64,000 nt of DNA from Podarcis bocagei (lineage: Eukaryota): assembly GCA_964188305.1 (NCBI GenBank), contig OZ076903.1, one strand, 5' to 3'. The translations under genes and the position numbers were made by a program. Positions 854 through 52,533 of this stretch are shown here, in pieces (position 1 is the first letter of the stretch; the number at the start of each line of letters is the position of its first letter). The notes beneath the pieces are model-generated. The model saw only the letters and a program-made list of their open reading frames with translations, was not told the DNA's origin and searched no databases.

Positions 854-1777
854 ATGCTCAGAAAGATGCCTACCTTATTTGAATTGTTTGGCTTCGTTCT
901 TCTGGTGATTGAAACCCTCATAGGAATGGTGGGGAATGGATTCATTGCTATCGTTAACTGCATTGACTGGTTTAGAAGCCGAAAACTCTCCCCGGCTGAC
1001 ATGATCCTAAGTTGTCTTAGCTTGTTCAGATTTGCATTTCTTGCCACTGTGATACAGACTGCAATAATAAACCTCTTTTTTGTCGACCCTTTTCTGATGC
1101 TGAAGATAAAAATTGCATATGATTCCTCGTGGGTATTTCTTAATACGGCTAACCTTTGGTTTGCCTCTTGGCTCAGTGTTTTGTACTGTGTGAAAATCGT
1201 TAACTTCTCCCACCCTCTCTTCCTGCAAATGAAGCGGAGATTCCCTGGGCTGGTGCCTTGGCTGCTTCTAGGGACTGTGGTCTTCTCTGCAATCACCACC
1301 ACTGTGGCAATAATAGGCAGTAACATTGTGTCTAAATGTAATCTACTTGACTCACATCTAAACAATAACAATGACTCAGCAATTAACACGATCAGTTCCT
1401 GTAAGTTTCTTAACCTTCTATATGTTGTTCCAGATTTCTTTCCCTTCACAATATTTTTGTTCTCATCCATTTTATTACTAATGTCTCTGTGGAGGCACAA
1501 AAATCTTCTACAAAACAGTGCGAGGGATGTCAGCATAGAAGCTCACCTGAATGCCATCAAAGCCCTGGCTTCTTTCTCCATTCTCTACATATCTAACATT
1601 TTTGTGGAAATTTTGTCAATAGTTTTGTTTCGGGTGGGCATTTACGACATTGGAGTGCATTTCATTTTTTTAAATGTGATGGCTGCATATTCCTCTGGTC
1701 ATGCTCTTATCCTGATCTTCATCAGTCCGAAATTGAAACAGGCATCAGTAAGGATGTTACATCAACTAAGATGCTGA
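854..1777 (+). CDS. TAS2R: Bitter taste receptor type 2 (TAS2R family), copy 1, intact, 307 aa, single exon
   Basis: 7 hydrophobic segments, very short N-terminus, TAS2R motifs GNGFI, [67 protein letters not shown]; ECL2 N-glycosylation NDS. True start may be the second ATG (866). Confidence 0.95.
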   Translation: [307 protein letters not shown]

Positions 1778-1786
1778 ACGAAGCAT

Positions 1787-1824
1787 TGAATGAATGAATG
1801 AATGAATGAATGAATGAATGAATG
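1787..1824 (+). repeat. (TGAA)n microsatellite just after TAS2R stop (also after most other copies; (GGAA)n variant after copies at 26178, 29669, 52533)
   Basis: Direct tandem repeat. Confidence 0.9.
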
Positions 1825-2329
1825 CACTATCGTGTCAAGACTGGACAGCAAGTGTTCTACCAATGTAGGTTCCTTCTTAGTTCTGAGCTTTACTTTCATA
1901 TATACATATTAACTTCCTCCCCGTTATTTACACAGCATTGTGAGGTGGCTGGTATATGGTTAATCAGAGCTCTGAAGATGCTGATTTTTTATTAATGGCT
2001 GCAGCTCTTTCCTTGAATGCGCAATTCACCTGTATGTTATGTGCCTCAGAGAGAGCAAGGAGCATTGAAATGGGAATGAACAGAGACGAAATAAGCTGAA
2101 AGTAGAGAATCCAGCATTTCTGGGGAGAATCTTCTGCCTGAAGTAGGAGATAATCTTCTGGGACACTTTCCAATCCTGTAATTTTAAATGTGGGATCTGC
2201 TAAAACCAGTCTAACTAGGTAGAATGTTGAAGATTACTTTCGTAGACATATCGTTTGTTACAATGTTTGCAGGTAGATAACAGAGTATGACTAAGGAATA
2301 TACAGATATTGTACCTGAAAACCTGGGAC

Positions 2330-2750
2330 GGGGGGAACGCACATCACTTGCAGCTCGTCTAAGTACCTGGCTCTCGCTCCGGTATGGATTGTAGGAGGCA
2401 GGGAGGCACTCAGTGCAAAAGCACTTTGCCTGCCGATAATCCTCCCATGCTGCCATTAAGAAACAGAGGTTCTCTTGTTAATTAGAGCTTAATTTGGACT
2501 AATGTACATGCACATGTGAGAAGAGATGAGATCATAAACTGCGGAACTGGACCAGCTGCAAGGTCTTTAAGGTCTGAACTTGAGAGAAGATGACGTCATT
2601 CAGTACAAAAGGCGGTGGGGGGAGGGGAGCCTATGGCTTCTTTATATGAAGTTTTCTTCTATACGTTTATGATTTGACAACCCTCCCTTGAATGCTAGTT
2701 CAGATTGTATATGTGCAAGTGAGGAGGGATGAAACTGGATTGTAGATATG
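2330..2750 (-). repeat. Diverged ~420-bp repeat arm, inverted relative to the arm at 8025-8460
   Basis: Reverse complement aligns by eye with 8025-8460 (e.g. ccttgcagctg, agaacctctg-ttcttaatgg, caggcaaagtgcttttgcact); further copies at ~30255-30680, 42285-42700, 53110-53500. Confidence 0.75.
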
Positions 2751-3689
2751 GAATATAACATTAAATGGAACTGTGTGTGTGTAAAAAAACAACAAGGAAA
2801 AAGGGAGGGAAGCTCACTGTTGCAAGAGGTTTACGATGGAAGCTTAAAGCTGACTCTTCCCCAACCTTTATTATTTACGGACTGAAATTAATAAGATTTT
2901 GGAACGCAGAAATAAAGAAAACCATCAAACCATCAATTCTAGCAAGTGGGGGGGGCCACCTAAATGATGTAATTTTGTATTTGAATGATTTGTATTAGTA
3001 ATTCTGTTATAATTTGGAATTGTTATAATGAGGCTTTTATTGGACTATAATAGAAAAATAATTAAAACTATTATCAAAAAGAAAGAAAAGTCTGGTGTCT
3101 GCTCCGTTTCCTGTGAAAGCCTGCTAGTGATGGATAGTCTTAATTCCCATTAAAGTGGTACCTCGGGTTACAAATGCCTCAGGTTCCAAACGCTTCAGGT
3201 TACAAACTCCACTAACCTGGAAGAGTTACCTTGAGTTGAGAAATCCACTTTCGAGCTAGGGAGGAGGTGGGGTTGCGGGCTTCACGCCCCTCCCCACACT
3301 CGCGGGGGCTGGCTCCACCCCCACGCGATAGCAGGGAATCCTCGGCCACGTCATACCCCGTGCCAACCAATTGGCGGGCGTGGGGGCGTGGCCTCGCCTA
3401 CTTAGGTCTGGCGCAGCCGAGGACCGCCCTCTTTCCTGCACCGCAGCTGACCCGGTTTGTATTTGGTTTGTATCTCAGATTCTGCGGCTTTGTTCCCTGG
3501 TCTCTGCTCGGCCTTCTTTCGTTACCTTTAGGCAATACCCTTCTCTGTGCTTGTTGGAAGAGCAAAGCGGGTGGAAACACTGCGGTTGCTTCGGCTCTCC
3601 AGCAGCCATCAGGTAGGAGGACCAGGGGTTTCGCCGCGGTGTCAGTCTCTCAATCAGCAGTCCCTCAGAAGGGGGTGGTTTCAGCAACT

Positions 3690-4133
3690 TATCCCAAACG
3701 CGCAATGCATCTCATAGCGCACATGGCACATGTGAGAAGGGCCTTTGCGCTGGCAGGGGAGAGTGCTGCCTTATCTTATGACAAAGATTTCCGTAGAAAT
3801 GCATCACTTTTGCCATTCACTCGCTGGGACCTGAGGAACCAGAATTATTGGATGGAACACGTAGGTCCCTATGTTGAAAAGAAATCTCAGGACTCTGCAA
3901 AAGCAGGGAAGGCGGAGCCAAAACAGTGTCGGCAATGCTGGGATTTCAACAGGGCGGTCTGTTCCCATCCAGCGTGTAAGTATGCCCACGAATTTGAAAG
4001 GTGCCTCAGTAATCACCCGGCCTCTGCTTGCTTGAAAGGAAAGCAGCCCTTTCGGGGCGGCAGGGGGTACTCACACCAAGGATCTAGGGGTCCCCCCAGA
4101 CATCCACAAGGGACTTTCGGGAACTGCCAGTAA
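3690..4133 (+). pseudogene. Ngaro gag C-terminal remnant with zinc finger
   Basis: ALSYDKDFRRNAS..RWD..YW and Cys/His cluster; N-terminal part appears deleted. Confidence 0.7.
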
Positions 4134-4149
4134 TGTGGCCCTCGGGCTA

Positions 4150-5700
4150 GCGGTTTCACCTATCAAATTACACCCGTTAAAAGCCCTACTTGATATATAC
4201 CCCAATGAAACAGCAGCCAAATATCTCTGGGATGGGTTTTCCTCAAGCTTTAGAATCCCGGTCTCTTTCCCACCCAGCCCGTGCAATCCTCCCAATCAGA
4301 AATAAGTTAGAGAAATGCCAGAGATAGCTGTAAAGAAAATTCAAAAGGAAATTGCAGCTGGGAGGGTGGCCGTCCCTTCAGCCAGCCCCCTATCAAAGGG
4401 TTACACATATCTCCCCTGGGCATTGTCCCTAAAAAAGCACCTGAGGAGTTCCGCATGATCCATAATATTTCCTACCCAAGGGGTGGTTCCGTCAACGATG
4501 CCATACCACTGGAGCTTTGCTCAGTGAAATATGCTTCATTTGACCAAGCTGTTAAACTGATTCGTAAATTCGGAAAGGGGGCGCTGCTCGCCAAATGCGA
4601 TATAGAATCAGCCTTCCGCCTCCTCCCAGTGCACCCTGAGGATTTTCGATGGTTAGGCTTTAGATTTGAAGGATCGTACTTCATTGACAAAGCTATGCCC
4701 ATGGGCTGTTCGGTGGCTTGTGCAGCCTTCGAATCTTTCAGTACATTCCTGGATTGGGCGCTTCAATTTAAAACAGGTTCCATCGGGGTCACGCATTACC
4801 TCAATGACTTTATTCTCGTTGCAGCTATAGAACCCCAGTGCACCAATTTGCTGAGGTCATTTTTCTCCTTACCTGAGGAACTCGGAGTCCCGTTGGCGGC
4901 AGACAAATCCGATGCAGCAGGTTCACTAGAGTTCGGGGTTTATTTCAAGGGTCAGTGGTGCGCTCAGCACTGGCCCCCCGATTGGCAGGGAAAACCCATC
5001 ACACGTGACCTCACCTTTTTAGAATTCTTTCCTATCGTAGTGGCAGTTCATTTATGGGGGGAGGTATTTAGTAACCACAAGGGACGCGGGTGGCGCTGTG
5101 GGTAAAACCTCAGCACCTAGGACTTGCCGATTGCATGGTCGGCGGTTCGAATCCCCGCGGCAGGGTGAGCTCCTGTCATTCGGTCCCAGCTCCTGCCCAC
5201 CTAGCAGTTCGAAAGCACCCTTAAGTGCAAGTAGATAAATAGGTACCGCTTTATAGCTGGAAGGTAAACGGTGTTTCCGTGTGCCGGAAACGCCAGAGCA
5301 GCTTCGTCACGCTGGCCACGTGACCCGGAAGTGTCTGCGGCTCCCGGGTCACGGGCTCCCGGGTCACTGGCTCCTGGCCTCTAGAGTGAGATGAGCACAC
5401 AACCCTAGAGTCTGTCAAGACTGGCCCGTACGGGCAGGGGTACCTTTACCTTTACCTATTTCGTAACCACAGGGTGTGCTTTTAAACCGACAATCAGGCA
5501 GTAGTATCAGTCCTATCAACACAATCTTCATGCTCCCCAAGGGTCGGTAGCCTCCTACGTTCCTTTGTCCTTCTATGTCTGGAGCGGAACATCTATTTTT
5601 CTGCCAAGTTTGTGCCAGGCGTTAATAATGACATCGCGGATGCTCTGTCTCATTTCCAAATGGATTGCTTCCGCTCGTTAGTGCCAGAGGCACAACAATT
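4150..5700 (+). pseudogene. Ngaro RT/RNase H remnant (stop, frameshifts, internal deletion at ~4908, SINE insertion)
   Basis: ORF 4455-5105 joins RT (LGVPLAADK) directly to RNase H (SDAAGS); YLDD degraded to YLND. Confidence 0.85.
5081..5456 (+). mobile_element. Sauria SINE inserted in Ngaro RNase H
   Basis: tRNA-like head with box B (ggttcgaatcc), (ACCTTT)n tail, 15-bp TSD tattt(a/c)gtaaccaca at 5065-5079 and 5457-5471. Confidence 0.9.
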
Positions 5701-5732
5701 GCTGCAGCCTTTCCCGGAGCATCTCTGGAGCC

Positions 5733-6635
5733 TTGGGAACGCGAAGTGATGAAGGAAGTATTGGCTGTGTTAGCACCTTCCACACTAAGATCATACAAAA
5801 AGGCGTGGACTTTTTGAAGTTCCATAACAGGGCAGGCAACGCTAACATCGCATCCCCTCCCTCAAAGGCTGAGGTCTTAAAATACTTGGTGCACTTAAAA
5901 AGCTTAGGCAGAGCTGCAAAGACCCTAAATATTCAGTCGGCTGCAATATCCTTCTTTTGTGAGGCGGTTCACTCCGCCGACCCTTGTGCGGACTTTGTTG
6001 TCCTCAAAGCGCTGGAAGGGTGGTGTAGGCTACAGCCCCCTAGTAATGACAAAAGGAAGCCCATAACATTCAACATCCTAAGCCAAATTCACAGAAAATT
6101 GAGAACCATCTGTTGGTCAAAATTTGAAGCCCAACTATTCTCAGCAGCCTATTCCATCACAGTTTTTGGAGCGCTCCGGATAGGGGAGGTGGTATGTGAA
6201 GGAGGCCAGGACAATGCTCAATGAGGTATTTTGTTGAATGATCTGACCCTTTCGCGCTCAGATTTGATTTTGCAGGTGCGCAGTTCAAAGACCGACCAGC
6301 AGGGGAAAGGGGCCCTCATTAGATTATTGCCAACAAGGAAGGCTGGGCCCTGCCCGGTAAAGGACACCAGGCGTTTCCTTTACCTGAGGCCGAGTTTCCC
6401 TGGCCTCCTATTAATTCACCGCGATGGGTCTCTCCTCACTAGGCACCAATTCACACGTGTGATGCGTATGGCAATCGCGGCTTGTGGCCTCAACGCAGCA
6501 GAGTTCGCATCCCATTCCTTCAGGATTGGGGCGGCTACCACGGCCGTACACCTGGGCCTCTCAGCGGAAAGAATTAAGGACATGGGGCACTGGAAATCTG
6601 ATGCTTACAAAACCTATGTTAGAAATAATCAATGA
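5733..6635 (+). pseudogene. Ngaro tyrosine recombinase, interrupted by TGA at 6222-6224
   Basis: R..K..HxxR..W..Y catalytic residues in ORFs 5733-6224 and 6231-6635 (same frame). Confidence 0.9.
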
Positions 6636-7257
6636 CTACTTTCTCTATACCTGATCATATCTTGTCATTTCATTCCCCTTTAGGAAACACGAGAATTCGG
6701 ATATGGATCGTGGGCCACAGTATCGTTCATTGGGCTGCTAAGCGGGCTGTCGTTACTGGCATGGGGCCAGGCTGGGTTTACCCCCAAACATAGATGTGAC
6801 TTGGATGGCTAGGAGGGGGGTGCGATGGGCCGAATTCATGCCAATGGTCAGGAACAGAGCCGCGATTGAAGGCCCACCAGACGCCTTAATTACACAGCTT
6901 GGGGAGAATGACTTAGCCTATAGAAAAGCTGTAGATTTACAGTGGAATATATTCAGAGACTTTGAAGGGCTACTTACCTCTTACCCCAGTGTTAGCATTC
7001 TGCAGTCATCTTTGTTGGAAAGGCGCACTTGGAGAGATTGTCGCTCCCCCATTGCAGTGAACAGAGCCCGAAAGTCCCTACAATGTACTGTGGCACATAG
7101 AGTGGCAGCTCTGGAGGGCAGGGTCATTAACCACCCCAATATCCAGTATGCCAAAGTGGCCCTCTACAGAGATGATGGCGTGCATCTTTCTGATGCTGGA
7201 AATGATGTGTGGCTGAATGATATCACTTTAGGGATTAGGGATTGGTTACAGGCTTGA
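6632..7257 (+). pseudogene. Ngaro SGNH/GDSL hydrolase ORF, frameshifted near 6770
   Basis: IVGHS, LGEND, DGVH motifs; ATGA overlap with YR stop; intact counterpart at 33689-34315. Confidence 0.85.
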
Positions 7258-8024
7258 GGGTATTGGCGGGGAGCCTGGGCTCGAGTGGCGGTAGGCATTG
7301 GTGGGGGTACAGTCTATTGTTATGCAGATGAAGGGGGAGAGGGAGCGTCATCACCTTCTCCCAAATAAAGGGTAGTCCGGCAAAGGATTCCAGGGGGTGT
7401 GGCCTCATCCTAAGCCTATGGAGGTGTGGGCCCATGGCACGCCCCCACGGGGTGACCCCGGGGGAGGCCCTAGTTGACGTGCCTCGGCAGGACTCCTCCC
7501 ACTGGTGGTTAACCCTCACCGGCCAGGCCGGTTAGTAGTAGGACAAATGCCTAAGCCAATACCACTCAATTACTGTAATCAATAAAGTTGTGGCCTAATT
7601 TGACCCATTAACTCGAACTCTTGTGTCCTGTGTCTTTATTTCTATGGGGGGAGGCGGGAACTCATCACGCAACTTTGCCCCAGGATGAGAATGGAAATCG
7701 TGTGCCGGCAGCACAGCTGAAGCTAGAGTCCCCAGTAGCAAAAGCACGCCTCTAGTTGAGAACAGTTTCAGGTTAAGAACGGACCTCCGGAACAAATTAA
7801 GTACTTAACCCGAGGTACCATGCTAAGGAAATAAGAATCATCTCCTCAGTGCGGCACTTCCATTCCTTTGTTTTGAACGTGTTCTGCCCTCTCTTTTGCT
7901 CAGCTGAATAAACGAGTGTTTGTTGGATCTCTTCTGTCTCTGGCGATTATTGATTTTCTGTGCCAAAGACAGCTGAGATTCGAATAGCGCAGCAAACAAC
8001 AGTTTCTTTTTTAAAATTTGTAAA

Positions 8025-8460
8025 CCATATCTATCATCTAGTTCGCTCCCTCTCTGCTTGTTGCTTTAAAATATTAATTTGGCTTCTAGGGGGTTTGCTG
8101 AGTCAGTTATGAAAATAAATATATATACATATATATAGAATCCATTTTTAGGCTCCCCCCTCCATATACCGTCTTTTACATTGAATGAAGTCTTCTTTCT
8201 AATTCACATCTTAACAACCTTGCAGCTGTTTCAATTCAGTAGTTTGTAACCTTGCCCAGACTGGTCTAGCATGCGTCTATACATTAATCCTAATTAAACT
8301 TTTAATGAGCAGAAGAACCTCTGCTTCTTAATGGTGGCGGAGGAGGGTTACCAACAGGCAAAGTGCTTTTGCACTCAGCACCTCCCTGCCTTACGCATTC
8401 CATATTGGAGCGAAAGCCAGGTACCGAGACAACCTGCAAGTGAAGTCCGCTCCCCCCTGG
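8025..8460 (+). repeat. Forward arm of array-wide ~430-bp repeat upstream of TAS2R units
   Basis: Copies (some partial) at ~24060, 27315, 35530, 43845, 47210, 50470, 62905. Confidence 0.75.
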
Positions 8461-9480
8461 CTCGGTGGGGGACAGGAATTGCAAGTATAATTACCCTCAA
8501 TCATCCTTGTTTTCTCCTTCGCCAACGATCTCCCATTGTCATGGGAGCTGTCTCCATTAAGGCAGCCAGAACTGGAAGCCGTGTCTGCAGTGAAGTTAAT
8601 ACCTAACTACTTAAATGAAGAGTGCCATAGTGCTTCTTGTAGTGCTTCTAAATTGATAGGAAGGAGCACAGATTTAGAGTAGTTGATTCGCAATCCTGCT
8701 ACCCTGTGATACATTTCTAACTGCCGCCTAGGTGACTAAAGGCTGTTATTGGATTTTGCAAAGATAAAGGGGTGTCATCTGCCAACATACTCACTTTGTG
8801 TACCTCATCCTGCACAATGACACCCTCTGTAAAAGGCGTCTTTGCGTAGTTGGATGCCTAGTACCTCCATGAACAATGCAAACAGCAATGGCAACAGAGG
8901 GCAGCTCTGCTGGGTGTCCCTTAAGAGGTCAAAACCTGAGCGTCAAATCCATTGATTGCTTAAAGAGGGGCAAGTACTACATAAACAATGAATCAATTCT
9001 AAAAAAAAAAAAATCTTCTATTGGCATGCACTATTGAACACCCTGTTTTATTTCTCTGACCAATTAGAACCACGTTCCTCACAAACACAATAAATTTATG
9101 AAATCATTTGATAGACATCTCTGTTTTCAGATGGATTAAAAATAATCATACTGGTGAACAAACATTAATCAAAATAAACAAATCCTAAAAGAATCATGTA
9201 TCCCTGTTTGTCAAGCCAGAAGCAAAGATGATATTTAGCTCCACTGTCAAATTTGCAAATATGACAGCAGAATATATGATATAGATTTAGTAATTGAATC
9301 TTTCCAGATGTGATTTGCATTTGCACAGAATCAACAAATGAAAATAGCTCGCTCCCCTCCCTGCAAGTTTCTCTATTCTTGAGAGAAGGCAGAAGTATTC
9401 TGCTCCCCACTGGTCATATAAAGAGCAGCATCAGCCTCTGCTAATATTACACATTGCACTGGAAGAAACGCTTCTATTTC

Positions 9481-10416
9481 ATGCTTAGAAAGATGCCTAC
9501 CTTATTTGAATTGTTTGGCTTCTTTCTTCTGGTGATTGAAACCCTCACAGGAATGGTGGGAAATGGATTTATTGCTATCATTAACTTCATTGACTGGTTT
9601 AGAAGCCGAAAACTATCCCCAGCTGACATGATCCTCAGTTGTCTTAGCTTGTTCAGATTTGCATTTCATGTTGTTTTGATACAGGCTGAAATATCCAACC
9701 TCTTTTTCGTGGACCCTGTAAATATGCTGAATCTAAACATTTCATCTGATTTCTCATGGCTATTTCTTAATACGGCTAGCCTTTGGTTTGCCGCTTGGCT
9801 CAGTGTCTTGTACTGCGTAAAAATTGCTAACTTCTCCCACCCTCTCTTCCTGCAAATGAAGCGGAGATTCCCTGGGCTGGTGCCTTGGCTTCTTCTGGGG
9901 ACAGTGGTCTTCTCTGCAATCACCACCACGGTAGCAATAACAGGCAATAACATTTTTTCTAAATGTAATCTATATGAATCACATCTAAACAAGAACAATG
10001 ACTCAGCAATTAACACATCCAATTCCTGTGAGTTTCTTATCCTACTATATATTTTTCTAAATCTCTTTCCCTTCACGATGTTTTTGATCTCATCCATTTT
10101 ATTACTAACTTCTCTGTGGAGGCACAAAAATCTGTTACAAAACAAAGCGAGGGATGTCAGCACAGAAGTTCACCTGAATGCCATCAAAGCCCTGACTTCT
10201 TTCTTCGTTCTCTACGTAACTAACGTTTTTGTGGAAATCTTGTCAATAGTTTTGTTTTGGAAGGGCATTAATGTCAAGGGGGTGAATTTAATTGTTTATA
10301 ATGTGATTGCTGCTTATTCCACTGGTCATGCCGTTAGCCTGATCTTCATGAGTCCCAAACTGAAACAGGAATCAATCAAGATGCTACATCAGCTAAAATG
10401 CTGTATGAAGCATTGA
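9481..10416 (+). CDS. TAS2R: TAS2R copy 2, intact, 311 aa (stop shifted 4 codons: KCCMKH)
   Basis: Same motifs as copy 1; ATG at 9481 (track start 9454 is a TTG); octamer 9313-9320, TATA 9417-9422. Confidence 0.95.
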   Translation: [311 protein letters not shown]

Positions 10417-10490
10417 ATGAATGAATGAATGAATGAATGCACTATCATGTCAAGACTGAACAGCAAATGTTCTACCAGTATAGTTTCCTT

Positions 10491-10871
10491 ATTGATGCTT
10501 TTGAATTATGGTGCTGGAGGAGACTCTTGAGAGTCCCATGGACTGCAAGAAGATCAAACCTCTCCATTCTGAAGGAAATCAGCCCGGAGTGCTCACTGGA
10601 AGGACAGATCGTGAAGCTGAGGCTCCAAGACTTTGGCCACCTCATGAGAAGAGAAGACTCCCTGGAAAAGACCCTGATGTTGGGAAAGATGGAGGGCACA
10701 AGGAGAAGGGGACGACAGAGAATGAGATGGTTGGATGGTGTTCTTGAAGCTACTAGCATGAGTTTGATCAAACTGCGGGAGGCAGTGGAGGACAGAAGTG
10801 CCTGGCGTGCTCTGGTCCATGGGGTCACGAAGAGTCAGACACGACTAAACGACTAAACAACAACAACAACA
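10491..10871 (+). mobile_element. Bov-B (RTE-clade) LINE, 5'-truncated 3' end
   Basis: IDAFELWCWRRLLRVPWTARRSN...LEKTLMLGK..G.RRRGRQRMRWLD, (CAA)n tail, 11-bp TSD atagtttcctt (10480-10490, 10872-10882). Confidence 0.93.
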
Positions 10872-11707
10872 ATAGTTTCCTTCTTAGTTCTGTGCTTTCC
10901 TTTCATATATCCATATTAACTTCCTTCAAATTATTTACACAGCATTGTGAGGTGGCCTGTATATGGTTAATCAGAGCTCTGAAGATGCTGTTTTTTTCCT
11001 TAATGGCTGCAGCTCTTTCCATGAATGGTCGATTCTCCTGTATGTTATGTGCCTCAGAAAGAACAAGCAGCACTGCAATGGGAATGAACAGAGACTTGAG
11101 AATGAACAAAAGTAAGCGGAAACTAGAGGATCCAGCTTTTGTAGGGGTAATCTTCTGCCTGAAGTAGGAGATAATCTCCTGCGGAACTTTCCAGTTCTGT
11201 GGTTTTAAGTCTGGGATCCGCTAAACCGCTTTAACTAGGAGGAACGTTGAAGATTACTTTCATAGATGTATCATTTATTCAAATGTTTGCAGGCAGATGA
11301 TAGAGAGTGACTAAAGAATATACAGATACTGTTCCTGAAAAGCAAGTGCTGCCAGCAAGGGATCTGTATAAATAACAAAAGCCCGACAGTTTTGACTCAG
11401 GCTGTGTACGCATTTCCATTTTCCCCCAGCTCTAATTCTAGCGCACTCCCACCACTTGTGTTTGAATCCAAGCACACGTGACTTAAGCCACAGTCCTTAT
11501 GTGTCCTGCAGCATCTTGAGAAATGCTGGTGTTCAATGTCTTTCCCCTCAAACCAGCTTCCATCTCATAGAAAGCTATACATTGCAGCATTTTTTAAATT
11601 TTATTCAGCTATTATGTTTGCTAGTCCGTTTCCTTACCAAGTAATTCAGAGAGACTTACACTAAAAAAACCCTCAAACTAAAGCCCAGGCGCAAAGAAAA
11701 GACTTTA

Positions 11708-11933
11708 CAGTGGTACCTTGGGTTAAGAACTTAATTCGTTGTGGAGGTCTGTTGTTAACCTGAAACGGTTCTTAACCTGAAGCACCACTTTAGCTAATGG
11801 GGCCTCCTGCTGCCGCTGTGCCGCCGCTGCATGATTTCTGTTCTCATCCTGCAGCAAAGTTCTTAACCCAAGGTAATATTTCTGGGTTAGCAGGGTCTGT
11901 AACTTGAAGCATATGTAACCCGAGGTACCATTG
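11708..11933. mobile_element. Tigger/mariner-like MITE
   Basis: TA-CAGTGGTACC...GGTACCATTG-TA termini; paralog at ~38867-39087. Confidence 0.8.
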
Positions 11934-11954
11934 TACTTCGGGGCTAAAACTGGG

Positions 11955-12090
11955 TGGTGGTGGTGGCAGGCCTGCCTGCCTGGGGAGAGCATTCCACAAG
12001 TGAGGGGCCACCACTGAGAAGGCCTGTTCTCATGTCACCACCCTCCAAAGCTCCATGGAGGAGAAGCACAAATAAGGGCCTCGGATGATG
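11955..12090 (-). mobile_element. Probable L2 LINE fragment
   Basis: Resembles antisense squamate L2 ORF2 3' part (gcattccacaa..gccaccactgagaaggcc); recognition only. Confidence 0.4.
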
Positions 12091-12587
12091 ACAACATGAT
12101 CCACTTTGATTCTCCTGGGAAGAGGCAGCTAAGCTGAGATGTATATTTTTCGAACAGCTCTTCAGCATGCACACGACACCCCACTGAATTGGAGTTGGGG
12201 GCGATGCAGGTGCAGGAAAACAAATCAGGTTATGAAAGACATCTCCACCCGCTTTTGATTTGAGATGTAGCAGTGCGAGTGAGGGACAAACCACTAATTT
12301 GTACCTTGCTCAAGTCTAGGAAATGAGAGCGAAAGAGTGCTGAATTAATTTCTAAAAGGATCAGATGGTGCTGGCTGTCTCTCTGAAAATCTGATGGGGG
12401 AGCCGAGAGCTATTAGACATCTGTTGGAGTGCTTAATGCTAAATTTTCACCTGTCTTCTACTTGTATATTTCTAAGTAAGCACAACTATTTCAAAATGCC
12501 ATCAAGCATCCCTCTAAGCCTATTCCAAAGGAAACCAAATGTCTGAAACTTCTCACTGCTTAGAGACTTTGTGTGTTCTTAACAGTA

Positions 12588-12933
12588 TAAGGTAAAGGTA
12601 AAGGGACCCCTGACCATTAGGTCCAGTTGTGACCGACTCTGGGGTTGCGGCGCTCATCTCACTCTATAGGCCGAGGGAGCAGGCGTTTGTCCGCAGACAG
12701 CTTCCGGGTTATGTGGCCAGCATGACAGAGCTGCTCATAGTGAACGAGAGCAGCGCACGGAAATGCCGTTTACCTTCTCACCAGAGCGGTACCTATTTAT
12801 CTACTTGCACTTGGACATGCTTTCGAACTGCTAGGTTGGCAGGAGCAGGGACTGAGAAACGGGAGCTCACCCCGTCGTGGAGATTCAAACCGCCAACCTT
12901 CTGATTAGCAAGTCCTAGGTTCTGTGGTTTAAC
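12588..12933 (-). mobile_element. Sauria SINE (minus strand)
   Basis: (AAAGGT)n tail and reverse-complement homology to SINE at 5081; paralog at ~39748-40094. Confidence 0.9.
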
Positions 12934-13022
12934 TAGCTATTGCAAAATCACTAAGTTCCTAGTGGTGGTTGCTTTTTGGGGTGTCAGGGTTGTTGTTGTT
13001 ATTATTATTATTTCTATCCAAT

Positions 13023-16491: not shown

Positions 16492-16545
16492 GTAAGCTCT
16501 GTCTCAAAAAAAATTTTTTTTGCGAGCTCACGAAGATAGGCAAAG

Positions 16546-40094: not shown

Positions 40095-40798
40095 TAGCTA
40101 TAGCAAAATCACTAAGTTCCTAGTGGTGGTTGCTTTTTGGGGGGTCAGGGTTGTTGTTGTTGTTTTATTATTATTATTATTATTTCTATCCAATGTGAAC
40201 AGCAATGGCAACAGAGGGCAGCCCTGCTGGGTGTCCCTTAAGAGGTCGAAACCTGAGTATCAAATCCACTGATTGCTTAAAGAGGTGGAAGAACTTAGAA
40301 AGCAAGGAATCAGTTTTTTAAAAAATTCTTCTGCTGGCATGCACAATTGAACACCCTGTTTTATATTCTGACCAATTAGAACCACGTTCCTCACAAACAC
40401 AATAAATTTATGAAATCATTTGATAGACACCTCTGTTTTCAGATGGATTAAAAATAATCATACTGGTGAACCAACATTAATCAAAATAAACAAATCCTAA
40501 AAGAATCATGTATCACTGTTTGTCAAGCCAGATGCAAAGATGATATTTAGCACCACTTTTGAATTTGCAAATATGACGTCATAACTGATGCTATAGATTT
40601 AGTAATATACTCTTTCCAGATGTGATTTGCATTTGCACAGAATCAACAAATGAAAATAGCTCACATCCCTCCCTGCAAGTTTCTCTATTCTTGAGAGAAG
40701 GCAGAAGTATTCTGCTCCCCACTGGTCATATAAAGGGCAGCATCAGCATCAGCCTCTGCTAATATTATACATTGCACTGGAAGGAACGCTTCTATTTC

Positions 40799-41722
40799 AT
40801 GCTCAGAAAGATGCTTACCTTATTTGAATTGTTTGGCTTCGTTCTTCTGGTGATTGAAACCCTCATAGGAATGGTGGGAAATGGATTCATTGCTATCGTT
40901 AACTGCATTGGCTGGCATAGAAGTCGAAAACTATCCCCGGCTGACATGATCCTGAGTTGTCTTAGCTTGTTCAGATTTGCATTTCATGCCGTTACGCTAC
41001 AGATTGCAATATTCAAACTCTTCTTCGTGGACCCTTTTCTGATGTTGAAGCTAAACATTGCATATGATTTCTCATGGCTATTTCTTAATACGACTAGCCT
41101 TTGGTTTGCCGCTTGGCTCACTGTTTTGTACTGTGTGAAAATCGTTAACTTCTCCCACCCTCTCTTCCTGCAAATGAAGCGGAGATTCCCTGGACTGGTG
41201 CCTTGGCTGCTTCTGGTGACAGTGGTCTTCTCTGCAATCACCACCACTGTGGCAATAACAGGCAGTATCATTGTGTCTAAATGTAATCCTTTTGAATCAC
41301 ATCTAAACAATAGCAGTGACTCAGGAATTAACACGACCAATTCCTGTGAGTTTCTTACCCTACCATATATTTTTCCAAATCTCTTTCCCTTCATGATATT
41401 TTTGTTCTCATCCATTTTATTGCTAACTTCTCTGTGGAGGCACAAAAATCTTCTACGAAACAGTGCGAGTGATGCCAGCAGAGAAGTTCACCTGAATGCC
41501 ATCAAAGCCCTGGCTTCTTTCTCCATTCTCTACGTAACTAACGTTTTTGTGGCAATTTTGTCAATAGTTTTGTCTCGGATGGGCATTAACGACAATGGAG
41601 TGCATTTCATTTTTTTAAATGTGATTGCTGCATATTCCTCTGGTCATGCTCTTATCCTGATCTTCATCAGTCCGAAATTGAAACACGCATCAGTAAGGAT
41701 GTTACATCAACTAAGATGCTGA
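40799..41722 (+). CDS. TAS2R: TAS2R copy 7, intact, 307 aa
   Basis: ATG at 40799 (track start 40772 is TTG); octamer 40625-40632, TATA 40729-40734. Confidence 0.95.
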   Translation: [307 protein letters not shown]

Positions 41723-46456: not shown

Positions 46457-47099
46457 ATGCTCAGAAAGATGCCTACCTTATTTGAATTGTTTGGCTTCAT
46501 TCTTCTGGTGACTGAAACCCTCACAGGAATGGTGGGAAATGGATTCATTGCGATCGTTAACTACATTGACTGATTTAGAAGCCAAATAGTATCCCCGGCT
46601 GACATGATACTGAGTTTGCTTGGCTTGTTCAGATTTGCATTTCATGCCGTTTTGATACAGGTTGCAATAATAAACGTCTTTTTTGTTGAGACCTTTAAGA
46701 TAATGAATGTATATATTGCATACAATGCCCTGTGGCTATATCTTAATAAGCCTAGCCTTTGGTTTGCCTCTTGGCTCAGTGTTTTGTACTGTGTAAAAAT
46801 TGCTAACTTCTCCAACCCTCTCTTCCTGCAAATGAAGCAGAGATTCCCTGGGCTGGTGCCTTGGCTGCTTCTGGGGACTGTGGGCTTCTCTGCAATCACC
46901 ACCACTGTGGCACAAACAGCCTTTATTATGACTAAATGTAATCGTGATCTATTTGAATCACATCTAAACAATAACAATGTCTCGGCAACTAACACGACCA
47001 ATTCCTGTGCGTTTTTTATCCTACTTGATATTTTATCAAATTATCTTCCTTTCATGATATTTTTGATCTCATCCATTTTATTACTAACTTCTCTGTGGA
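46457..47099 (+). pseudogene. TAS2R: TAS2R copy 8: Trp39 to TGA (46571-46573) and 3' truncation after TSLW
   Basis: 5' flank with octamer 46283-46290 and TATA 46387-46392; fused at ~47100 to MITE sequence. Confidence 0.92.
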
Positions 47100-48396
47100 A
47101 GGTACTATTTCTGGCTTAGCAAGAGGCCCCAACTGAATAAACGAGTGTTTGTTGGATCTCCTCTCTCTCTGGCTATTATTGATTCTCTGTGCCAAAGACA
47201 GCTGAGATTCGAATAATTAAACTTTTAATGAGCGGAAGAACCTCTGTTTCTTAATGGTGGCAGAGGAGGGCTACCAATAGGCAAAGTGCTTTTGCACTCA
47301 GCATCTCCCTGCCTCCTGCATTCCATATCGGAGTGAAACCCAGGTACTGAGATGATCTGCATGTGAAGTCTGTCCCCCCCCCCTTGCCCCGGGGGCGGGG
47401 GGACTTGCAAGTATAATTACCCTCAATCATCCTTGTTTTCTCCTTCCCTAACAATCTCCCATTGTTGTGGGAGCTGTCTCCATGAAGGCAGCCAGAACTG
47501 GAAGCCGTGTCTGCAGTGAAGTTAATACCTAACTACTTAAATGGAGAGTGCCATAGTGCTTCTTGTAGTGCTTCTAAATTGATAGGAAGGAGCGCAGATT
47601 TAGAGTAGTTGATTTGCAACTCTGCTACCCTGTGGTACATTTCTATCTGCCACTTAGGTGGCTAAAGGCTGTTATAGGATTTTGCAAAGATGAAAGGGTG
47701 CCATCTGCCACCATACTCACTTTGTGTACCTCATCCTGCACAATGACACCCTCTGTAGAAGGCGTCTTTGTATAGTTGGATGCCTAGTACCCTCATGAAC
47801 AATGCAAACAGCAATGGCGACAGAAGGCAGCCCTTCTGGGTGTCCCTTAAGAGGTCGATAACCTGAGCGTCAGATCCATTGATTGCTTAAAGAGGTGCAA
47901 GAACATAGAAAACAATGAATCAATTCTAATAAAAATTCTTCTATTGTCCTGCACAATTAAAGACCTCACTTCATTTCTTTGAGCAATTAGAACCACGTCT
48001 CTCACAAACATAATAAATTTATGAAATAAATTTGATAGACATCTCTGTTTTCAGAGGGATTAAAAATAATAATACTGGTGAACAAACATTAATCAAGATA
48101 AACAAATCCTAAAAGAATCATGTATCACTCTTTGTTAAGCCAGATGCAAAGATGATATTTAGCACCACTGTCGAATGGCAGCAGAATATATGATATAGAT
48201 TTAGTAATGGAATCTTTCCAGATGTGATTTGCATGCAAACAGAAATAAAAAATGGAAAAAAACTCGCTCCCTTCCCTGCAAGTTTCTCTATTCTGGAAAG
48301 TAGGCAGATCAGTTCTCCACTGGTCATATAAAGAGCAGCATCAGCATCAGCCTGTGCTAATATTACACATTACACTGAAAGAAACGCTTCTATTTC

Positions 48397-49314
48397 ATGC
48401 TTAGAAAGATGCCTACCTTATTTGAATTGTTTGGCTTCGTTCTTCTGGTGATTGAAACCCTCACAGGAATGGTGGGAAATGGATTCATTGCTATCGTTAA
48501 CTGCATTGACTGGTTTAGAAGACATAAACTATCCCCGGCTGACATGATCCTAAGTTGTCTTAGCTTGTTCAGATTTGCATTTCATGCCGTTCTGATGCAG
48601 GCTGAAATATCCAACCTCTTTTTCGTGGACCCTTTTCTGATGCCGAAGATAAAAATTTCATCTGATTCCTCATGGATGTTTCTAAATACAGCTAGCCTTT
48701 GGTTTGCCGCTTGGCTCAGTGTTTTGTACTGTGTAAAAATTGCTAACTTCTCCCACCCTCTCTTCCTCCAATTGAAGCGGAGATTCCCTGGGCTGGTGCC
48801 TTGGCTGCTTCTGGGGACTGTGGGCTTCTCTGCAATCACCACCACTATGACAATAACAGGCATTATGACTAAATGTAATATATATGAATCACATCTAAAC
48901 CATAACAATGTCTCAGCAATTAACACGACCAATTCCTGTGTGTTTTTTATCCTACTTGATATTTTATCAAATTTCCTTCCTTTCATGATATTTTTGATCT
49001 CATCTATTTTATTACTAACTTCTCTGTGGAGGCACAAAAATCTTCTACGAAACAGTGCAAGGGATGTCAGCACAGAAGCTCACCTGAATGCCATCAAAGC
49101 CCTGGCTTCTTTCTCCATTCTCTACGTAACTAATGTTTTTGTGGAAATCTTGTCAATAGTTTTATTTTGGATGGGCATTAACGACAATGGGGTGCATTTA
49201 ATTTTTTTTAATGTGATTGCTGCATATTCCTCTGGTCATGCTCTTATCCTGCTCTTCATGAGTCCCAAACTGAAACAGGAATTAATCAAGATGCTACATC
49301 AACTAAAATACTGA
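48397..49314 (+). CDS. TAS2R: TAS2R copy 9, intact, 305 aa
   Basis: TAS2R motifs; 2-codon shorter ECL2; octamer 48227-48234, TATA 48327-48332. Confidence 0.95.
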   Translation: [305 protein letters not shown]

Positions 49315-49835
49315 ATGAATGAATGAATGAATGAATGAATGAATGAATGAATGAATGCACTATCGTGTCAAGACTGAACAGCAAGTGTTCTACCAATGTA
49401 GGTTCCTTCTTAGTTCTGTGCTTTACTTTCATATATACCTATTAACTTCCTCCCCGTTATTTACACAGCATTGTGAGGTGGCTGGTATATGGTTAATCAG
49501 AGCTCTGAAGATGCTGATTTTTTCTTAATGGCTGCAGCTCTTTCCTTGAATGGTCAATTCACCTGTATGTTATGTGCCTCAGAGAGAGCAAGCAGCATTG
49601 AAATGGGAATGAACAGAGACGAAATAAGCTTAAAATAGAGGATCCAGCCTTTCTGGGGAGAATCTTCTGCCTGAAGTAGGAGATAATCTTCTGGGAAACT
49701 TTCCAATCCTATAATTTTAAATGTGGGATCTGCTAAAACCAGTCTAACTAGGTAGAATTTTGAAGTTTACTTTCATAGACGTATCGTTTGTTACAATGTT
49801 TGCAGGTAGATAACAGAGAATGGCTAAAGAATATA

Positions 49836-50107
49836 AATTGGTACCTCAGGTTAATAACTTAATTCGTTCCGGAGGTCCGTTCTTAACCTGAAACCGTTCT
49901 TAACCGGAGGTACCACTTTAGCTAATGGGCCTCCCACTGCTGCCGCACGATTTCTGTTCTTCACCTGAAGCAAAGTTCTTAACCCGAGGTACTATTTCTG
50001 GCTTAGCAAGAGGCCCCATTAGTGAAAGCACGCCTCTAGTTAAGAACAGTTTCAGGTTAATAACGGACCTCCGGAATGAATTAGGTTCATAACTAGAGGT
50101 ACCACTG
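49836..50107. mobile_element. Tigger/mariner-like MITE
   Basis: Paralog of 22992-23264. Confidence 0.75.
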
Positions 50108-51615
50108 TATCAGCTTACGTACTTGCTTAAGAATGGAACAGAGAAGGTGCCTATGTTAGGATAGAATAATAGTATTGAAACAGGCGTTGAGGAGTTTCCT
50201 TCCTGTGTCTGGTCAGCCTGTTCAAGGTCTCCAGTTAGGCTGGTCTGATTACAGCCAGGAGGCCCTGAAAGGGAGGGGGAAAGAGGGAGGGGGGGAAAGA
50301 AAGAGCTTATAAAGAAATAAGAATCATCTCCTCTATGCGGCACTTCCATTCCTTTGTTTTGGACGTGTTCTGCCCTCTCTTTTGCTCAGCTGAATAAACG
50401 AGTGTTTGTTGGATCTCCTCTGTCTCTGGCTATTATTGATTCTCTGTGCCAAAGACAGCTGAGATTCGAATAATTAAACTTTTAATGAGTGGAAGAACCT
50501 CTGCTTCTTATTTGTGGTGGAGGAGGATTAACAACAGGCAAAATGCTTTTGCACTCAGCATCTCCCTGCCTCCCGCATTCCATATTGGAGTGGAAGCCAG
50601 GTACCGAGACGATCTGCAAGTGAAGTCAGTTCCCCCCTGGCCCGGGGGGGGGGGACAGACTTGCAAGTATAATTACTCACAATCATCCTTGTTTTCTCCT
50701 TCGCCAACGATCTCCCATTGTCATGGGAGCTGTCTCCATTAAGGCAGCCAGAACTGGAAGCTCTGTCTGCAGTGAAGTTAATACCTAACTACTTAAATGG
50801 AGAGTGCCATAGTGCTTCTTGTAGTACTTCTAAATTGATAGGAAGGAGCACAGATTTAGAGTAGTTGCTTTGCAATCCTGTTACCCTGTGATACATTTCT
50901 AACTGCCGCTTAGGTGGCTAAAGGCTGTTACTGGATTTTGCAAAGATGAAAGGGGGTCATCTGCCAACATACTCACCCTCTGTAGAAGGCGTCTTTGTAT
51001 AGCTGAATGCCTAGTATCCCCAGCAATGGCGACAGAGGGCAGCCCTTCTGGGTGTCCCTTAAGAGGTTAATAACCTGATTATGAAATCCATTGATTGCTT
51101 AAAGAGGTGCAAGAACTTAGAAAACAAGGAATCAATTCTTAAAAAAATTCTTCTATTGTCCTGCACAAGTAAACACCTTGCTTTATTTCTTTGAGCAATT
51201 AGAACCACGTCCCTCACAAACAGAATAAATTTATGAAATCATTTGATAGAAATCTCTGTTTGCACATGGATGAAAAATAATAATACTGGTGAACAAACAT
51301 TAATCAAGATAAACAAATCCTAAAAGAATCATGTATCACTGTTTGTTAAGCCAGATGCAAAGATGATATTTAGCACCACTGTCAAATTTGCGAATATGAC
51401 AGCAGAATATATGATATAGATTTAGTAATGGAATCTTTCCAGATGTGATTTGCATCCGAACAAAATCAACAAATGAAAATAGCTCGCTCCCCTCCCTGCA
51501 AGTTTCTCTATTCTTGAGAGAAGGCAGAAGTATTCTGCTCCCCACTGGTCATATAAAGAGCAGCATCAGCCTGTGCTAATATTACACATTACACTGGAAG
51601 AAACGCTTCAACTTC

Positions 51616-52533
51616 ATGCTTAGAAAGATGCCTACCTTATTTGAATTGTTTGGCTTCTTTCTTCTAGTGATTGAAACCCTCACAGGAATGGTGGGAAATG
51701 GATTCATTGCGATCGTTAACTGCATTGACTGGTTTAGAAGCCGAAAACTATCCTCAGCTGACATGATCCTGAGTTGTCTTAGCTTGTACAGATTTGCATT
51801 TCATGCCGTTCTGATGCAGGCTGCAATATTCAAACTCTTCTTCACGGACTCTTTTCTGATGCCGAAGATAAAAATTTCATCTGATTCCTCATGGATGTTT
51901 CTAAATACAGCTAGCCTTTGGTTTGCCGCTTGGCTCAGTGTTTTGTACTGTGTAAAAATCGTTAACTTCTCCCACCCTCTCTTCCTGCAAATGAAGCGGA
52001 GATTCCCTGGGCTCGTGCCTTGGCTGCTTCTGGGGACAGTGGTCTTCTCTGCAATCACCACCACTATGACAATAACAGGCATTATGACTAAATGTAATAT
52101 GTATGAATCACATCTAAACAATAACAATGACTCAGCAATTGACACTACCAATTCCTGTGAGTTTCTTATCCTACTAGATGTTTTTCCAAATTTCCCTCCT
52201 TTCATGATATTTTTGATCTCATCCATTTTATTACTAACTTCTCTGTGGAGGCACAAAAATCTTCTACGAAACAGTGCGAAGGATGTCAGCACAGAAGCTC
52301 ACCTGAATGCCATCAAAGCCCTGGCTTCTTTCTTCATTCTCTATGTATCTAACGTTTTTGTGTTAATCTTGTACATAGTTTTCATTTGGATGGGCTTTAA
52401 CAACAATGGGGTGCATTTAATTTTTCTTAATGTGTTTGCTGCATATTCCTCCGGTCATGCTCTTATCCTGATCTTCATCAGTCCGAAATTGAAACAGGAA
52501 TCAGTAAGGATTTTACATCAACTAAGATGCTGA
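51616..52533 (+). CDS. TAS2R: TAS2R copy 10, intact, 305 aa
   Basis: TAS2R motifs; octamer 51448-51455, TATA 51552-51557. Confidence 0.95.
   Translation: [305 protein letters not shown]

What the first reader, a model, noticed from the sequence alone, without database searches (positions are those of the whole stretch)
854..52533. Combinatorial patchwork of TAS2R paralogs: cassette-like shuffling of pocket and loop segments
Seen: short variant blocks assort independently among copies. TM2 end: AEISN in copies 2,6,9 vs AIFK in 4,7,10. ECL1/TM3: ISSDF in 2,4,6; ISSDS in 9,10; IAYD in 1,5,7,11. ECL2: NIFSKCNLY in 2,3,6; IIVSKCNPF in 4,7; IMTKCN in 8,9,10. TM5: LDILSN in 3,8,9; YIFPNL in 4,6,7; YVVPD in 1,5,11. 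The intracellular segments ([43 protein letters not shown]) are almost invariant. No single tree explains these patterns. Inference: recurrent interlocus gene conversion or unequal crossover is generating a combinatorial ligand-binding repertoire, with pseudogenes 3 and 8 as possible donors.
Basis: partly seen in the sequence, partly recalled or inferred. Interest (0 to 1): 0.72.

Follow-up and report, generated by a model that had tools for sequence, protein, structure and literature searches.

The report
Gene conversion among lizard bitter-receptor genes
A tandem array of eleven bitter-taste receptor genes in a wall-lizard-like genome has swapped short stretches of DNA between copies, a known process in such gene families that an earlier study did not detect in two other lizards; there is no evidence that it is a purpose-built shuffling system.

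Summary
Eleven TAS2R (PF05296) copies lie head-to-tail on the + strand: nine intact and two pseudogenes (c3, c8). Copy 11 lies outside the stated range, at 61210-62151.

The mosaic is more than chance:
- PHI test p<=0.0005, and about 0.001 on third codon positions alone; p=0.0002 in the non-coding upstream region.
- An exhaustive exact 3SEQ-type scan leaves two events after correction. c3 carries a c2/c6-like tract (13174-13446, corrected p=4e-6). c10 carries a c1/c7-like 3' tract (52455-52526, corrected p=0.016).
- The 3' 127 nt reject the whole-gene tree (AU p=0.011).
- Inside a young 12.7-kb segmental duplication, receptor units are 1.6-4.4 times more diverged (3.5-9%) than the spacer (2.2%).

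"No single tree" is overstated. Most of the coding sequence fits one backbone of four gene pairs, with tracts of 45-280 bp laid over it. The invariant intracellular segments have normal synonymous divergence, so purifying selection keeps them, not homogenisation. Exchange also reaches flanks and a pseudogene acceptor, so it is ordinary ectopic conversion with unequal crossover, not a targeted cassette system.

The syntenic Podarcis muralis array, an independent assembly, shows the same signal. Verdict: a new member of a known kind; moderate interest.

The parts
854..1777 (+). c1, intact TAS2R (307 aa); recent duplicate of c5
   Evidence: Pfam PF05296 E=3e-68; 94% aa identity to c5
9481..10416 (+). 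c2, intact TAS2R; canonical stop lost, 4 extra codons; recent duplicate of c6
13022..13803 (+). c3, pseudogene (5' 119 nt and promoter region deleted, 23-nt deletion); backbone of c8/m5 type
13174..13446 (+). c2/c6-like converted tract inside pseudogene c3 (about 250-275 bp)
   Evidence: exact 3SEQ-type p=1.2e-9, corrected 4e-6; run of 26-31 identical polymorphic sites, global p=0.0005
25255..26178 (+). c4, intact TAS2R; closest P. muralis copy is m2
25507..25640 (+). c2/c6-like tract in c4 (carries ISSDF); absent from the P. muralis copy m2
   Evidence: triplet m2/c2/c4 p=4e-4, chosen test; nearest-neighbour windows
28746..29669 (+). c5, intact TAS2R
29579..29669 (+). c4-identical 3' tract in c5 (91 bp; continues into the c4-type microsatellite)
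   Evidence: 24 consecutive identical polymorphic sites, global p=0.0005-0.011; c1/c5 differences cluster here; downstream alignment
36988..37911 (+). c6, intact TAS2R
37722..37828 (+). stretch where c6 has left the c2/m4 state and taken states present in c1, c4, c5
   Evidence: triplet c6/m4/c2 p=0.008; 20 of 25 c6-derived states are already present in another paralog
40799..41722 (+). c7, intact TAS2R; c4-like body, c1-like 3' end
46457..47101 (+). c8, pseudogene (stops, 3' third missing); a LINE RT fragment lies in its upstream region
48397..49314 (+). c9, intact TAS2R; mosaic of m6-like, m7-like and c8-like parts
48922..48967 (+). c8/c3/m5-type tract in c9 (LDILSN, outer TM5)
   Evidence: 8 consecutive sites, p=8e-5 for the chosen triplet; not significant after correction over all triplets
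51616..52533 (+). c10, intact TAS2R; orthologue of P. muralis m7
   Evidence: (c10,m7) bootstrap 100; flanking synteny at 95%
52455..52526 (+). c1/c7-like 3' tract in c10, absent from orthologue m7
   Evidence: exact p=4.7e-6, corrected 0.016
61210..62151 (+). c11, divergent TAS2R (about 70% aa identity to c1); orthologue of m8; serves as outgroup
280..13022 (+). block A of a young segmental duplication (c1, retroelement, c2, spacer)
28167..40194 (+). block B of the segmental duplication (c5, retroelement, c6, spacer); 2.2% diverged from A in the spacer, 3.5-9.0% in the TAS2R units
36447..36527 (+). non-coding upstream tract shared by c6 and c10 (51081-51161)
   Evidence: 27 consecutive identical polymorphic sites, global p=0.01

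Best explanation
This is a birth-and-death tandem array of single-exon TAS2R bitter-receptor genes in a lacertid lizard close to Podarcis. Each copy sits in a repeat unit of about 2.1-3.1 kb, and the units are 87-91% identical. Misalignment between units has produced duplications, including a 12.7-kb block duplication about 2% diverged. It has also produced many short ectopic (non-allelic) gene-conversion tracts of roughly 45-280 bp. These tracts copy sequence from one unit into another, in coding and non-coding DNA, and in intact genes and pseudogenes alike. Shown: the mosaic, its statistical excess, tract locations, and the polarity of some events relative to P. muralis orthologues. Inferred: the molecular mechanism (repair of double-strand breaks templated on a misaligned paralog), and that the process itself is untargeted. 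The amino-acid patchwork shows only in the outer TM2/TM3/ECL2/TM5 segments because these evolve at omega about 1-1.6. The intracellular segments are held by purifying selection (omega 0.13-0.19) even though their synonymous divergence is normal.
For: Clustered incompatibility: PHI gives z=-5.7, p<=0.0005 on 9 intact coding sequences, p about 0.001 on third positions only, and p=0.0002 on the non-coding upstream region. Pairwise run-length (GENECONV-type) tests with global permutation p<=0.011: c4-c5 nt 836-926, c2/c6-c3 nt 427-569, c2-c5 and c6-c10 upstream. Exhaustive exact 3SEQ-type scan of 3,366 triplets: c3 mosaic corrected p=4e-6, c10 3' tract corrected p=0.016. Tree conflict: the 3' 127 nt give ((c1,c7),c10),(c4,c5) and reject the whole-gene tree (AU 0.011); every other segment rejects that 3' tree (AU 1e-9 to 0.012). 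Internal control: within the A/B duplication the spacer, which has no paralogous donors, differs at 123/5578 sites (2.2%), while the TAS2R-unit parts differ at 3.5-9.0% (Fisher p from 0.026 down to 4e-15). Polarised with P. muralis outgroups, 17/31 (c1/c5) and 30/44 (c2/c6) post-duplication changes take a state already present in another paralog, against about 17% expected for point mutation (p=2e-6 and 1e-13). pS is roughly uniform (about 0.10-0.18 in most windows) along the gene, including codons 101-150. Independent assembly: the syntenic P. muralis array keeps orthologous block combinations (m7 matches c10, m2 matches c4, m5 matches c3/c8, m6 carries AEISN+ISSDS like c9). It gives a significant PHI of its own, p=0.0002.
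Against: Only two events survive strict correction over all triplets. Most other tracts are individually modest (p 1e-3 to 1e-4 in tests chosen after looking at the data). Downstream non-coding DNA gives no PHI signal (p=0.70). Outgroup copies used for polarity can themselves be converted. Donors may lie outside the 64-kb window. Short conversion cannot always be told from unequal crossover within a gene; c7 and c9 may be crossover hybrids. Public reads were available only as short unitigs of 100-430 nt from related organisms. These cover the c4-c5 region at 97% identity or more but cannot bridge paralog-specific markers on both sides of a tract.
Confidence: 0.85

Rival explanations
1. Selected cassette shuffling. 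Conversion tracts that recombine pocket and loop segments, some drawn from a pseudogene reservoir, are preferentially retained because new combinations widen the range of bitter ligands detected. This would be analogous to templated diversification at MHC or chicken Ig loci.
For: Variable segments map to outer TM2, TM3, ECL2 and TM5 and evolve at omega 1-1.6. c9 carries a c8/m5-type outer-TM5 tract that neither m6 nor m7 has. c4 carries a c2/c6-type outer-TM3 tract that the closest P. muralis copy, m2, lacks.
Against: Exchange is equally evident in non-coding upstream DNA and at third positions. The strongest event converts a dead gene, c3. Three of the clearest tracts are in the C-terminal helix 8 and tail region (nt 836-926), not in the pocket. 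No ligand data, population data or site-model test is available. Power to see tracts is confined to variable segments, so any apparent enrichment there is an ascertainment effect.
Confidence: 0.12
2. Assembly chimeras. The patches are artefacts of collapsing or mis-joining reads from 88-91% identical tandem units.
For: Tandem arrays are error-prone in assembly. No read set from the source individual could be laid across the junctions.
Against: The window has no N. Tracts of 45-280 bp are far shorter than the read lengths that would cause mis-joins between units differing every 10 bp or so. The independently assembled P. muralis array shows orthologous combinations and its own recombination signal. 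Unitigs from four runs in three studies cover all 30 bins of 25200-30300 at 97% identity or more, except one bin in one run.
Confidence: 0.03
3. No exchange at all. A rapid burst of duplications plus parallel substitutions at a few hypervariable pocket codons mimics a mosaic.
For: Deep nodes of the gene tree are poorly supported (39-67%). Pocket codons have omega of 1 or more.
Against: Parallel amino-acid change cannot explain runs of 24-31 consecutive identical polymorphic sites that include silent sites, or the signal in third positions and non-coding DNA. It also cannot explain units 1.6-4.4 times more diverged than the spacer inside one young duplication.
Confidence: 0.02

Closest known systems
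Ectopic gene conversion among primate TAS2R paralogs (e.g. chimpanzee cTAS2R haplotypes, 133-bp tract in cTAS2R64; PMC3420883)
   Same: Same gene family, tandem clusters, short tracts of about 100 bp, and pseudogenes included among the loci compared.
   Different: There it was seen as segregating haplotypes within a species. Here it is seen as fixed differences in one assembly, in a reptile-specific expansion, with a cross-species comparison giving polarity.
Non-allelic gene conversion proposed for amphibian and other vertebrate TAS2R clusters (PMC11798467)
   Same: Clustered TAS2Rs whose nearest relatives lie in the same cluster. The authors propose conversion as an important force.
   Different: That paper infers it from clustering and orthology patterns. 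Here tract-level tests, a within-duplication control and orthologue polarity are given for one array.
Lizard Tas2r repertoires (green anole, Japanese gecko), GENECONV negative (PMC5564386)
   Same: Squamate Tas2r expansions by lineage-specific tandem duplication.
   Different: [quoted passage not shown] This lacertid array and its P. muralis counterpart do show it, probably because these paralogs are much more alike (about 88-95% nt identity).
Pseudogene-templated diversification (chicken Ig V genes; MHC class II exon 2 micro-conversion), from general knowledge
   Same: Short patches copied between paralogs can create new combinations in ligand-contacting segments. A pseudogene-lineage tract may sit in c9.
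   Different: There is no dedicated donor array, no unidirectionality (pseudogene c3 is an acceptor), no restriction to variable segments, and the changes are germline and fixed rather than programmed.

Membership tests
TAS2R bitter taste receptors (Pfam PF05296) | Significant match to the TAS2R profile over its full length | tested here: met
   E=1e-66 to 2e-70, profile positions 1-303 of 303, for c1, c6, c10 and c11
TAS2R bitter taste receptors (Pfam PF05296) | Single-exon ORF of about 300 aa with seven transmembrane helices and a short N-terminus | tested here: met
   Uninterrupted ORFs of 305-312 aa; the AlphaFold model has 7 helices plus helix 8, pTM 0.76
TAS2R bitter taste receptors (Pfam PF05296) | Sequence relatives with solved TAS2R structures | tested here: met
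   phmmer against PDB: TAS2R4 E=4.5e-33, TAS2R14 E=2.6e-32, TAS2R46 E=1e-27
TAS2R bitter taste receptors (Pfam PF05296) | Responds to bitter ligands and is expressed in taste cells | not testable with these tools
   No expression or ligand data were obtained
Interlocus (ectopic) gene conversion | Similarity tracts between paralogs that are longer than chance, on a backbone of different ancestry | tested here: met
   (c3 corrected p=4e-6; c10 corrected p=0.016; c4-c5 global p<=0.011)
Interlocus (ectopic) gene conversion | Signal includes silent and non-coding sites (so it is not convergent protein evolution) | tested here: met
   PHI on third positions p about 0.001; on upstream non-coding DNA p=0.0002
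Interlocus (ectopic) gene conversion | Patch is internal: both flanks keep the original ancestry (distinguishes conversion from a single crossover) | tested here: inconclusive
   Met for c3 (13174-13446), c4 (25507-25640) and c9 (48922-48967). For the 3' tracts of c5, c10 and c1 the right edge falls at or in the post-stop microsatellite. c10 keeps m7-orthologous DNA further downstream, which favours conversion.
Interlocus (ectopic) gene conversion | Non-reciprocal transfer with an identifiable donor and acceptor | tested here: inconclusive
   Polarity was inferred from P. muralis orthologues for c10, c4 and c6, but the outgroups can themselves be converted and donors may lie outside the window
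Programmed or selected cassette diversification system | Dedicated silent donors feeding expressed acceptors in one direction | tested here: not met
   The best-supported event has pseudogene c3 as acceptor, with c2/c6-type sequence as donor
Programmed or selected cassette diversification system | Exchange confined to ligand-contacting segments | tested here: not met
   Tracts occur in upstream non-coding DNA and in the C-terminal tail region

The most novel reading that the evidence does not exclude
Conversion in this array is not merely tolerated. Selection retains it as a way to recombine outer-TM and ECL2 pocket modules among paralogs. Decaying copies of the c8/c3 lineage, which is still an intact gene (m5) in P. 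muralis, would serve as a reservoir of pocket variants for live genes such as c9. The post-stop tetranucleotide microsatellite would act as a fixed boundary or initiation site for 3' tracts.
Probability: 0.12. Interest if true: 0.7.

Novelty: new member of a known kind. Interest (0 to 1): 0.4.

Why it matters
TAS2R repertoires are usually analysed as simple gene trees, by birth-and-death reconciliation and by dN/dS site models. In this array a tree-based reading would mis-date duplications. For example, (c9,c10) appear as a young pair at 98% bootstrap, although the P. muralis array already holds separate c9-like (m6) and c10-like (m7) copies. Such a reading would also inflate apparent positive selection. 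The published statement that conversion played no role in lizard Tas2r evolution (PMC5564386) does not hold for lacertids. The array also supplies natural chimeras, such as c9 against c10 and c4 against c7, that could be used to map ligand specificity to outer TM2, TM3 and TM5 segments.

Tried and rejected
1. Homogenising conversion as the cause of the invariant intracellular segments: rejected, because pS there (0.12-0.17) matches the rest of the gene.

2. Read-level validation: the only runs served were Logan unitigs of 100-430 nt from related organisms, holding at most 0.48 of the sampled words. They show that the region exists at 97% identity or more but cannot bridge tracts.

3. PHI on downstream non-coding DNA gave no signal (p=0.70, 28 informative sites).

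4. Coarse five-segment AU tests found conflict only at the 3' end. Segments A-D do not reject the whole-gene tree, so 'no single tree' was toned down.

5. Using downstream flanks to decide whether c9 is a crossover hybrid of the m5 and m6/m7 lineages: the flanks of all units are about 94% alike to several P. muralis units, so they are not diagnostic.

6. The unit-wide multiple alignment downstream of the stop codon was too gappy, so that region was re-aligned separately.

7. The PDB search printed an alignment to a human TAS2R4 chain. Only the names and E-values were used. Those letters were not saved, compared or searched further.

8. The two earlier notes on this window (a POU octamer, a retroelement PBS) do not bear on this finding.

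Full report
WHAT IS THERE

The window has no N. It carries eleven TAS2R copies, all on the + strand. Nine are intact ORFs of 305-312 aa:
- c1 854-1777
- c2 9481-10416
- c4 25255-26178
- c5 28746-29669
- c6 36988-37911
- c7 40799-41722
- c9 48397-49314
- c10 51616-52533
- c11 61210-62151

Two are pseudogenes. c3 (13022-13803) lacks its upstream region and the first 119 nt, and has a 23-nt deletion. c8 (46457-47101) has in-frame stops and lacks the 3' third.

Four tested copies match Pfam TAS2R end to end (E 1e-66 to 2e-70). c1 matches solved TAS2R structures (E 4.5e-33). That output printed a human chain; I used only names and E-values and did nothing further with it.

The best protein relatives are from Podarcis muralis (86-88% identity to c1, up to 96-97% for c6 and c7), then other lacertids. 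The genome is therefore a lacertid close to Podarcis.

Each gene sits in a repeat unit running from about -600 to +570 around the coding sequence; units are 87-91% identical. Retroelements lie between units: Ty3/gypsy gag-RT-RNaseH at 16.7-22 kb and a LINE RT at 44586-45536.

THE OBSERVATION

An AlphaFold model of c1 (mean pLDDT 78, pTM 0.76) puts the variable motifs at outer TM2, outer TM3, ECL2 and outer TM5. It puts the near-invariant ones at inner TM3/ICL2/inner TM4, inner TM5 and inner TM6. The one correction is that copy 11 lies beyond the stated end coordinate.

IS IT MORE THAN CHANCE?

Yes, by several approaches.
- PHI test. On the nine intact coding sequences incompatible sites are clustered (z=-5.7, p<=0.0005). 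This holds for third codon positions alone (p about 0.001) and for the non-coding upstream region alone (p=0.0002). Downstream DNA gives no signal (p=0.70).
- Run-length test. A GENECONV-type test with global permutation picks out c4-c5 at nt 836-926 (24 consecutive identical polymorphic sites, global p 0.0005-0.011). It also picks out c2/c6-c3 at nt 427-569 (p=0.0005) and upstream tracts c2-c5 and c6-c10.
- Triplet scan. I wrote an exact 3SEQ-type test (maximum descent of the hypergeometric walk). I ran it on all 3,366 parent-parent-child triplets from the window copies plus eight P. muralis copies. After Dunn-Sidak correction, two events remain. c3 is a c8/m5-type backbone with a c2/c6-type tract at 13174-13446 (p=1.2e-9, corrected 4e-6). 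c10 is an m7-type backbone with a c1/c7-type 3' tract at 52455-52526 (p=4.7e-6, corrected 0.016).
- Chosen triplets add further candidates:
  - c4, with a c2/c6-type tract at 25507-25640 (p=4e-4)
  - c9, with a c8-type tract at 48922-48967 (p=8e-5)
  - c5, with a c4-type 3' tract (p=0.003)
  - c6, departing from c2/m4 at 37722-37828 (p=0.008)
  These were picked after looking at the data and are not individually corrected.

TREES

The whole-coding-sequence ML tree has four well-supported pairs: (c1,c5) 99, (c2,c6) 100, (c9,c10) 98 and (c4,c7) 96. Its deeper nodes are weak.

Of five segments, four do not reject this tree. The last 127 nt give ((c1,c7),c10),(c4,c5) and reject it (AU 0.011, delta lnL 35). 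All other segments reject the 3' tree (AU 1e-9 to 0.012). 'No single tree' is therefore true but overstated. The pattern is a backbone with short overlaid tracts, not free assortment of cassettes.

AN INTERNAL CONTROL

Blocks 280-13022 (c1, retroelement, c2, spacer) and 28167-40194 (c5, retroelement, c6, spacer) are a young segmental duplication. In 5.6 kb of spacer, which has no other paralog in the window, the blocks differ at 2.2% of sites. The TAS2R-unit parts differ much more:
- c1/c5 coding sequence: 3.5%
- c2/c6 coding sequence: 5.3%
- downstream parts: 6.1-6.4%
- upstream parts: 8.3-9.0%

Fisher p against the spacer runs from 0.026 down to 4e-15. The extra differences come in clusters in which one partner matches a third copy.

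I polarised the changes with P. muralis outgroups. 17 of 31 (c1/c5) and 30 of 44 (c2/c6) post-duplication changes take a state already present in another paralog. About 17% is expected for point mutation (p=2e-6 and 1e-13).

CROSS-SPECIES CHECK

I fetched 39 kb of the syntenic P. muralis array (GCA_964188315.1, OZ076971.1). Intergenic identity to the window is 93-96%. The copy order there is m2 (c4-like), m3 (c1/c5-like pseudogene), m4 (c2/c6-like), m5 (c3/c8-like but intact), m6, m7 (c10 orthologue) and m8 (c11 orthologue).
- Several block combinations are shared between species. m7 matches c10. m2 matches c4 for ECL2 and TM5. m5 matches c3/c8. m6 carries AEISN+ISSDS like c9. These combinations are therefore old and are not artefacts of one assembly.
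- Others differ from the closest P. muralis copy and mark changes in one of the two lineages since their split:
  - c10's 3' end
  - c4's outer-TM3 tract
  - c9's LDILSN tract, which neither m6 nor m7 has
- The P. muralis copies give their own PHI signal (p=0.0002).
- The (c9,c10) 'pair' is partly a product of concerted evolution. In the joint tree c10 pairs with m7 at 100%, while c9 floats between m6-like and m7-like segments.

SELECTION VERSUS HOMOGENISATION

Nei-Gojobori windows show pS roughly uniform (about 0.10-0.18 in most windows), including the 'invariant' codons 101-150 (omega 0.13-0.19). The variable segments, codons 51-100, 141-210 and 241-280, run at omega about 1-1.6. The intracellular blocks are therefore conserved by purifying selection on the protein, not by conversion. 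The amino-acid mosaic is visible only where amino acids are free to differ.

INTERPRETATION

The best explanation (confidence 0.85) is ordinary ectopic gene conversion, with some unequal crossover, in a birth-and-death tandem array.

It is not a targeted cassette system, for three reasons. Exchange reaches non-coding DNA. The strongest event converts a dead gene. Three clear tracts lie in the C-terminal tail region.

The pseudogene-donor idea survives only as a possibility for c8 to c9.

The adaptive reading (about 0.12) cannot be tested without ligand or population data.

Assembly chimeras (about 0.03) are unlikely given the tract sizes and the P. muralis concordance. They are not formally excluded. 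The only public reads served were short unitigs from related organisms, which cover 25200-30300 at 97% identity or more but bridge nothing.

WHAT IS KNOWN

Ectopic conversion among TAS2R paralogs is documented in chimpanzees, for example a 133-bp tract (PMC3420883). It has been proposed as a general force for amphibian and other vertebrate clusters (PMC11798467).

For lizards, the one published GENECONV test (anole and gecko) found none and concluded conversion may have played no role (PMC5564386).

I found no paper on lacertid Tas2r conversion in the library. This is therefore a new member of a known kind, of moderate interest.

Noticed in passing
1787-1824, 10414-10439, 29702-29746, 37909-37962, 41732-41773, 49312-49357, 52544-52594: The copies examined downstream (c1-c7, c9, c10) each have a tetranucleotide microsatellite starting 0-35 nt after the stop codon. 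It is (TGAA)n in c1, c2, c6, c7 and c9 (short in c3), (AGGA/GAAG)n in c5 and c10, and mixed in c4. Several 3' conversion tracts end at it, so it may act as a tract boundary or initiation site.
   Followed up: partly
10402-10416: c2 has lost the canonical stop (TGA to TGT) and reads four codons further (..CCMKH*). The same tail occurs in a P. raffonei protein (P0007), and P. muralis m4 shows the same stop loss (its ORF also reads ..KCC past the usual stop).
   Followed up: partly
13022-13803 and 46457-47101; L001/L002 (merged coordinates 20784-21710): The window's two pseudogenes c3 and c8 are sisters, and their P. muralis orthologue m5 is an intact ORF. The lineage was therefore lost recently in this species, after being duplicated.
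   Followed up: partly
protein P0015 (P. muralis, UniProt): This annotated protein is a chimera. Its N-terminal half is like P0005/c10 and its C-terminal half is like c11/m8. It is either a real unequal-crossover hybrid or an artefact of the older assembly.
   Followed up: no
61210-61224; also m1, m2, m8 in L001/L002: c11 and three P. muralis copies lack the first ATG of the MLRKM start (ACG, TCG or GTG instead). The functional start is probably the second Met (MPTLFELF...), as in the NCBI models.
   Followed up: no
16310-22200; 44586-45536; 3267-6224 and 31294-34315: A Ty3/gypsy element (gag, RT, RNase H) lies between c3 and c4. A LINE RT fragment is inserted in the upstream region of c8. An RT-bearing element was duplicated along with the c1/c5 block.
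   Followed up: no
26568-27080: Unitig depth in four runs rises to between 1e4 and 1e6 here, with many joints and loose ends. This is a very high-copy dispersed repeat (SINE-like) just downstream of c4; copies also lie at about 23000, 34800, 38900 and 49900.
   Followed up: no
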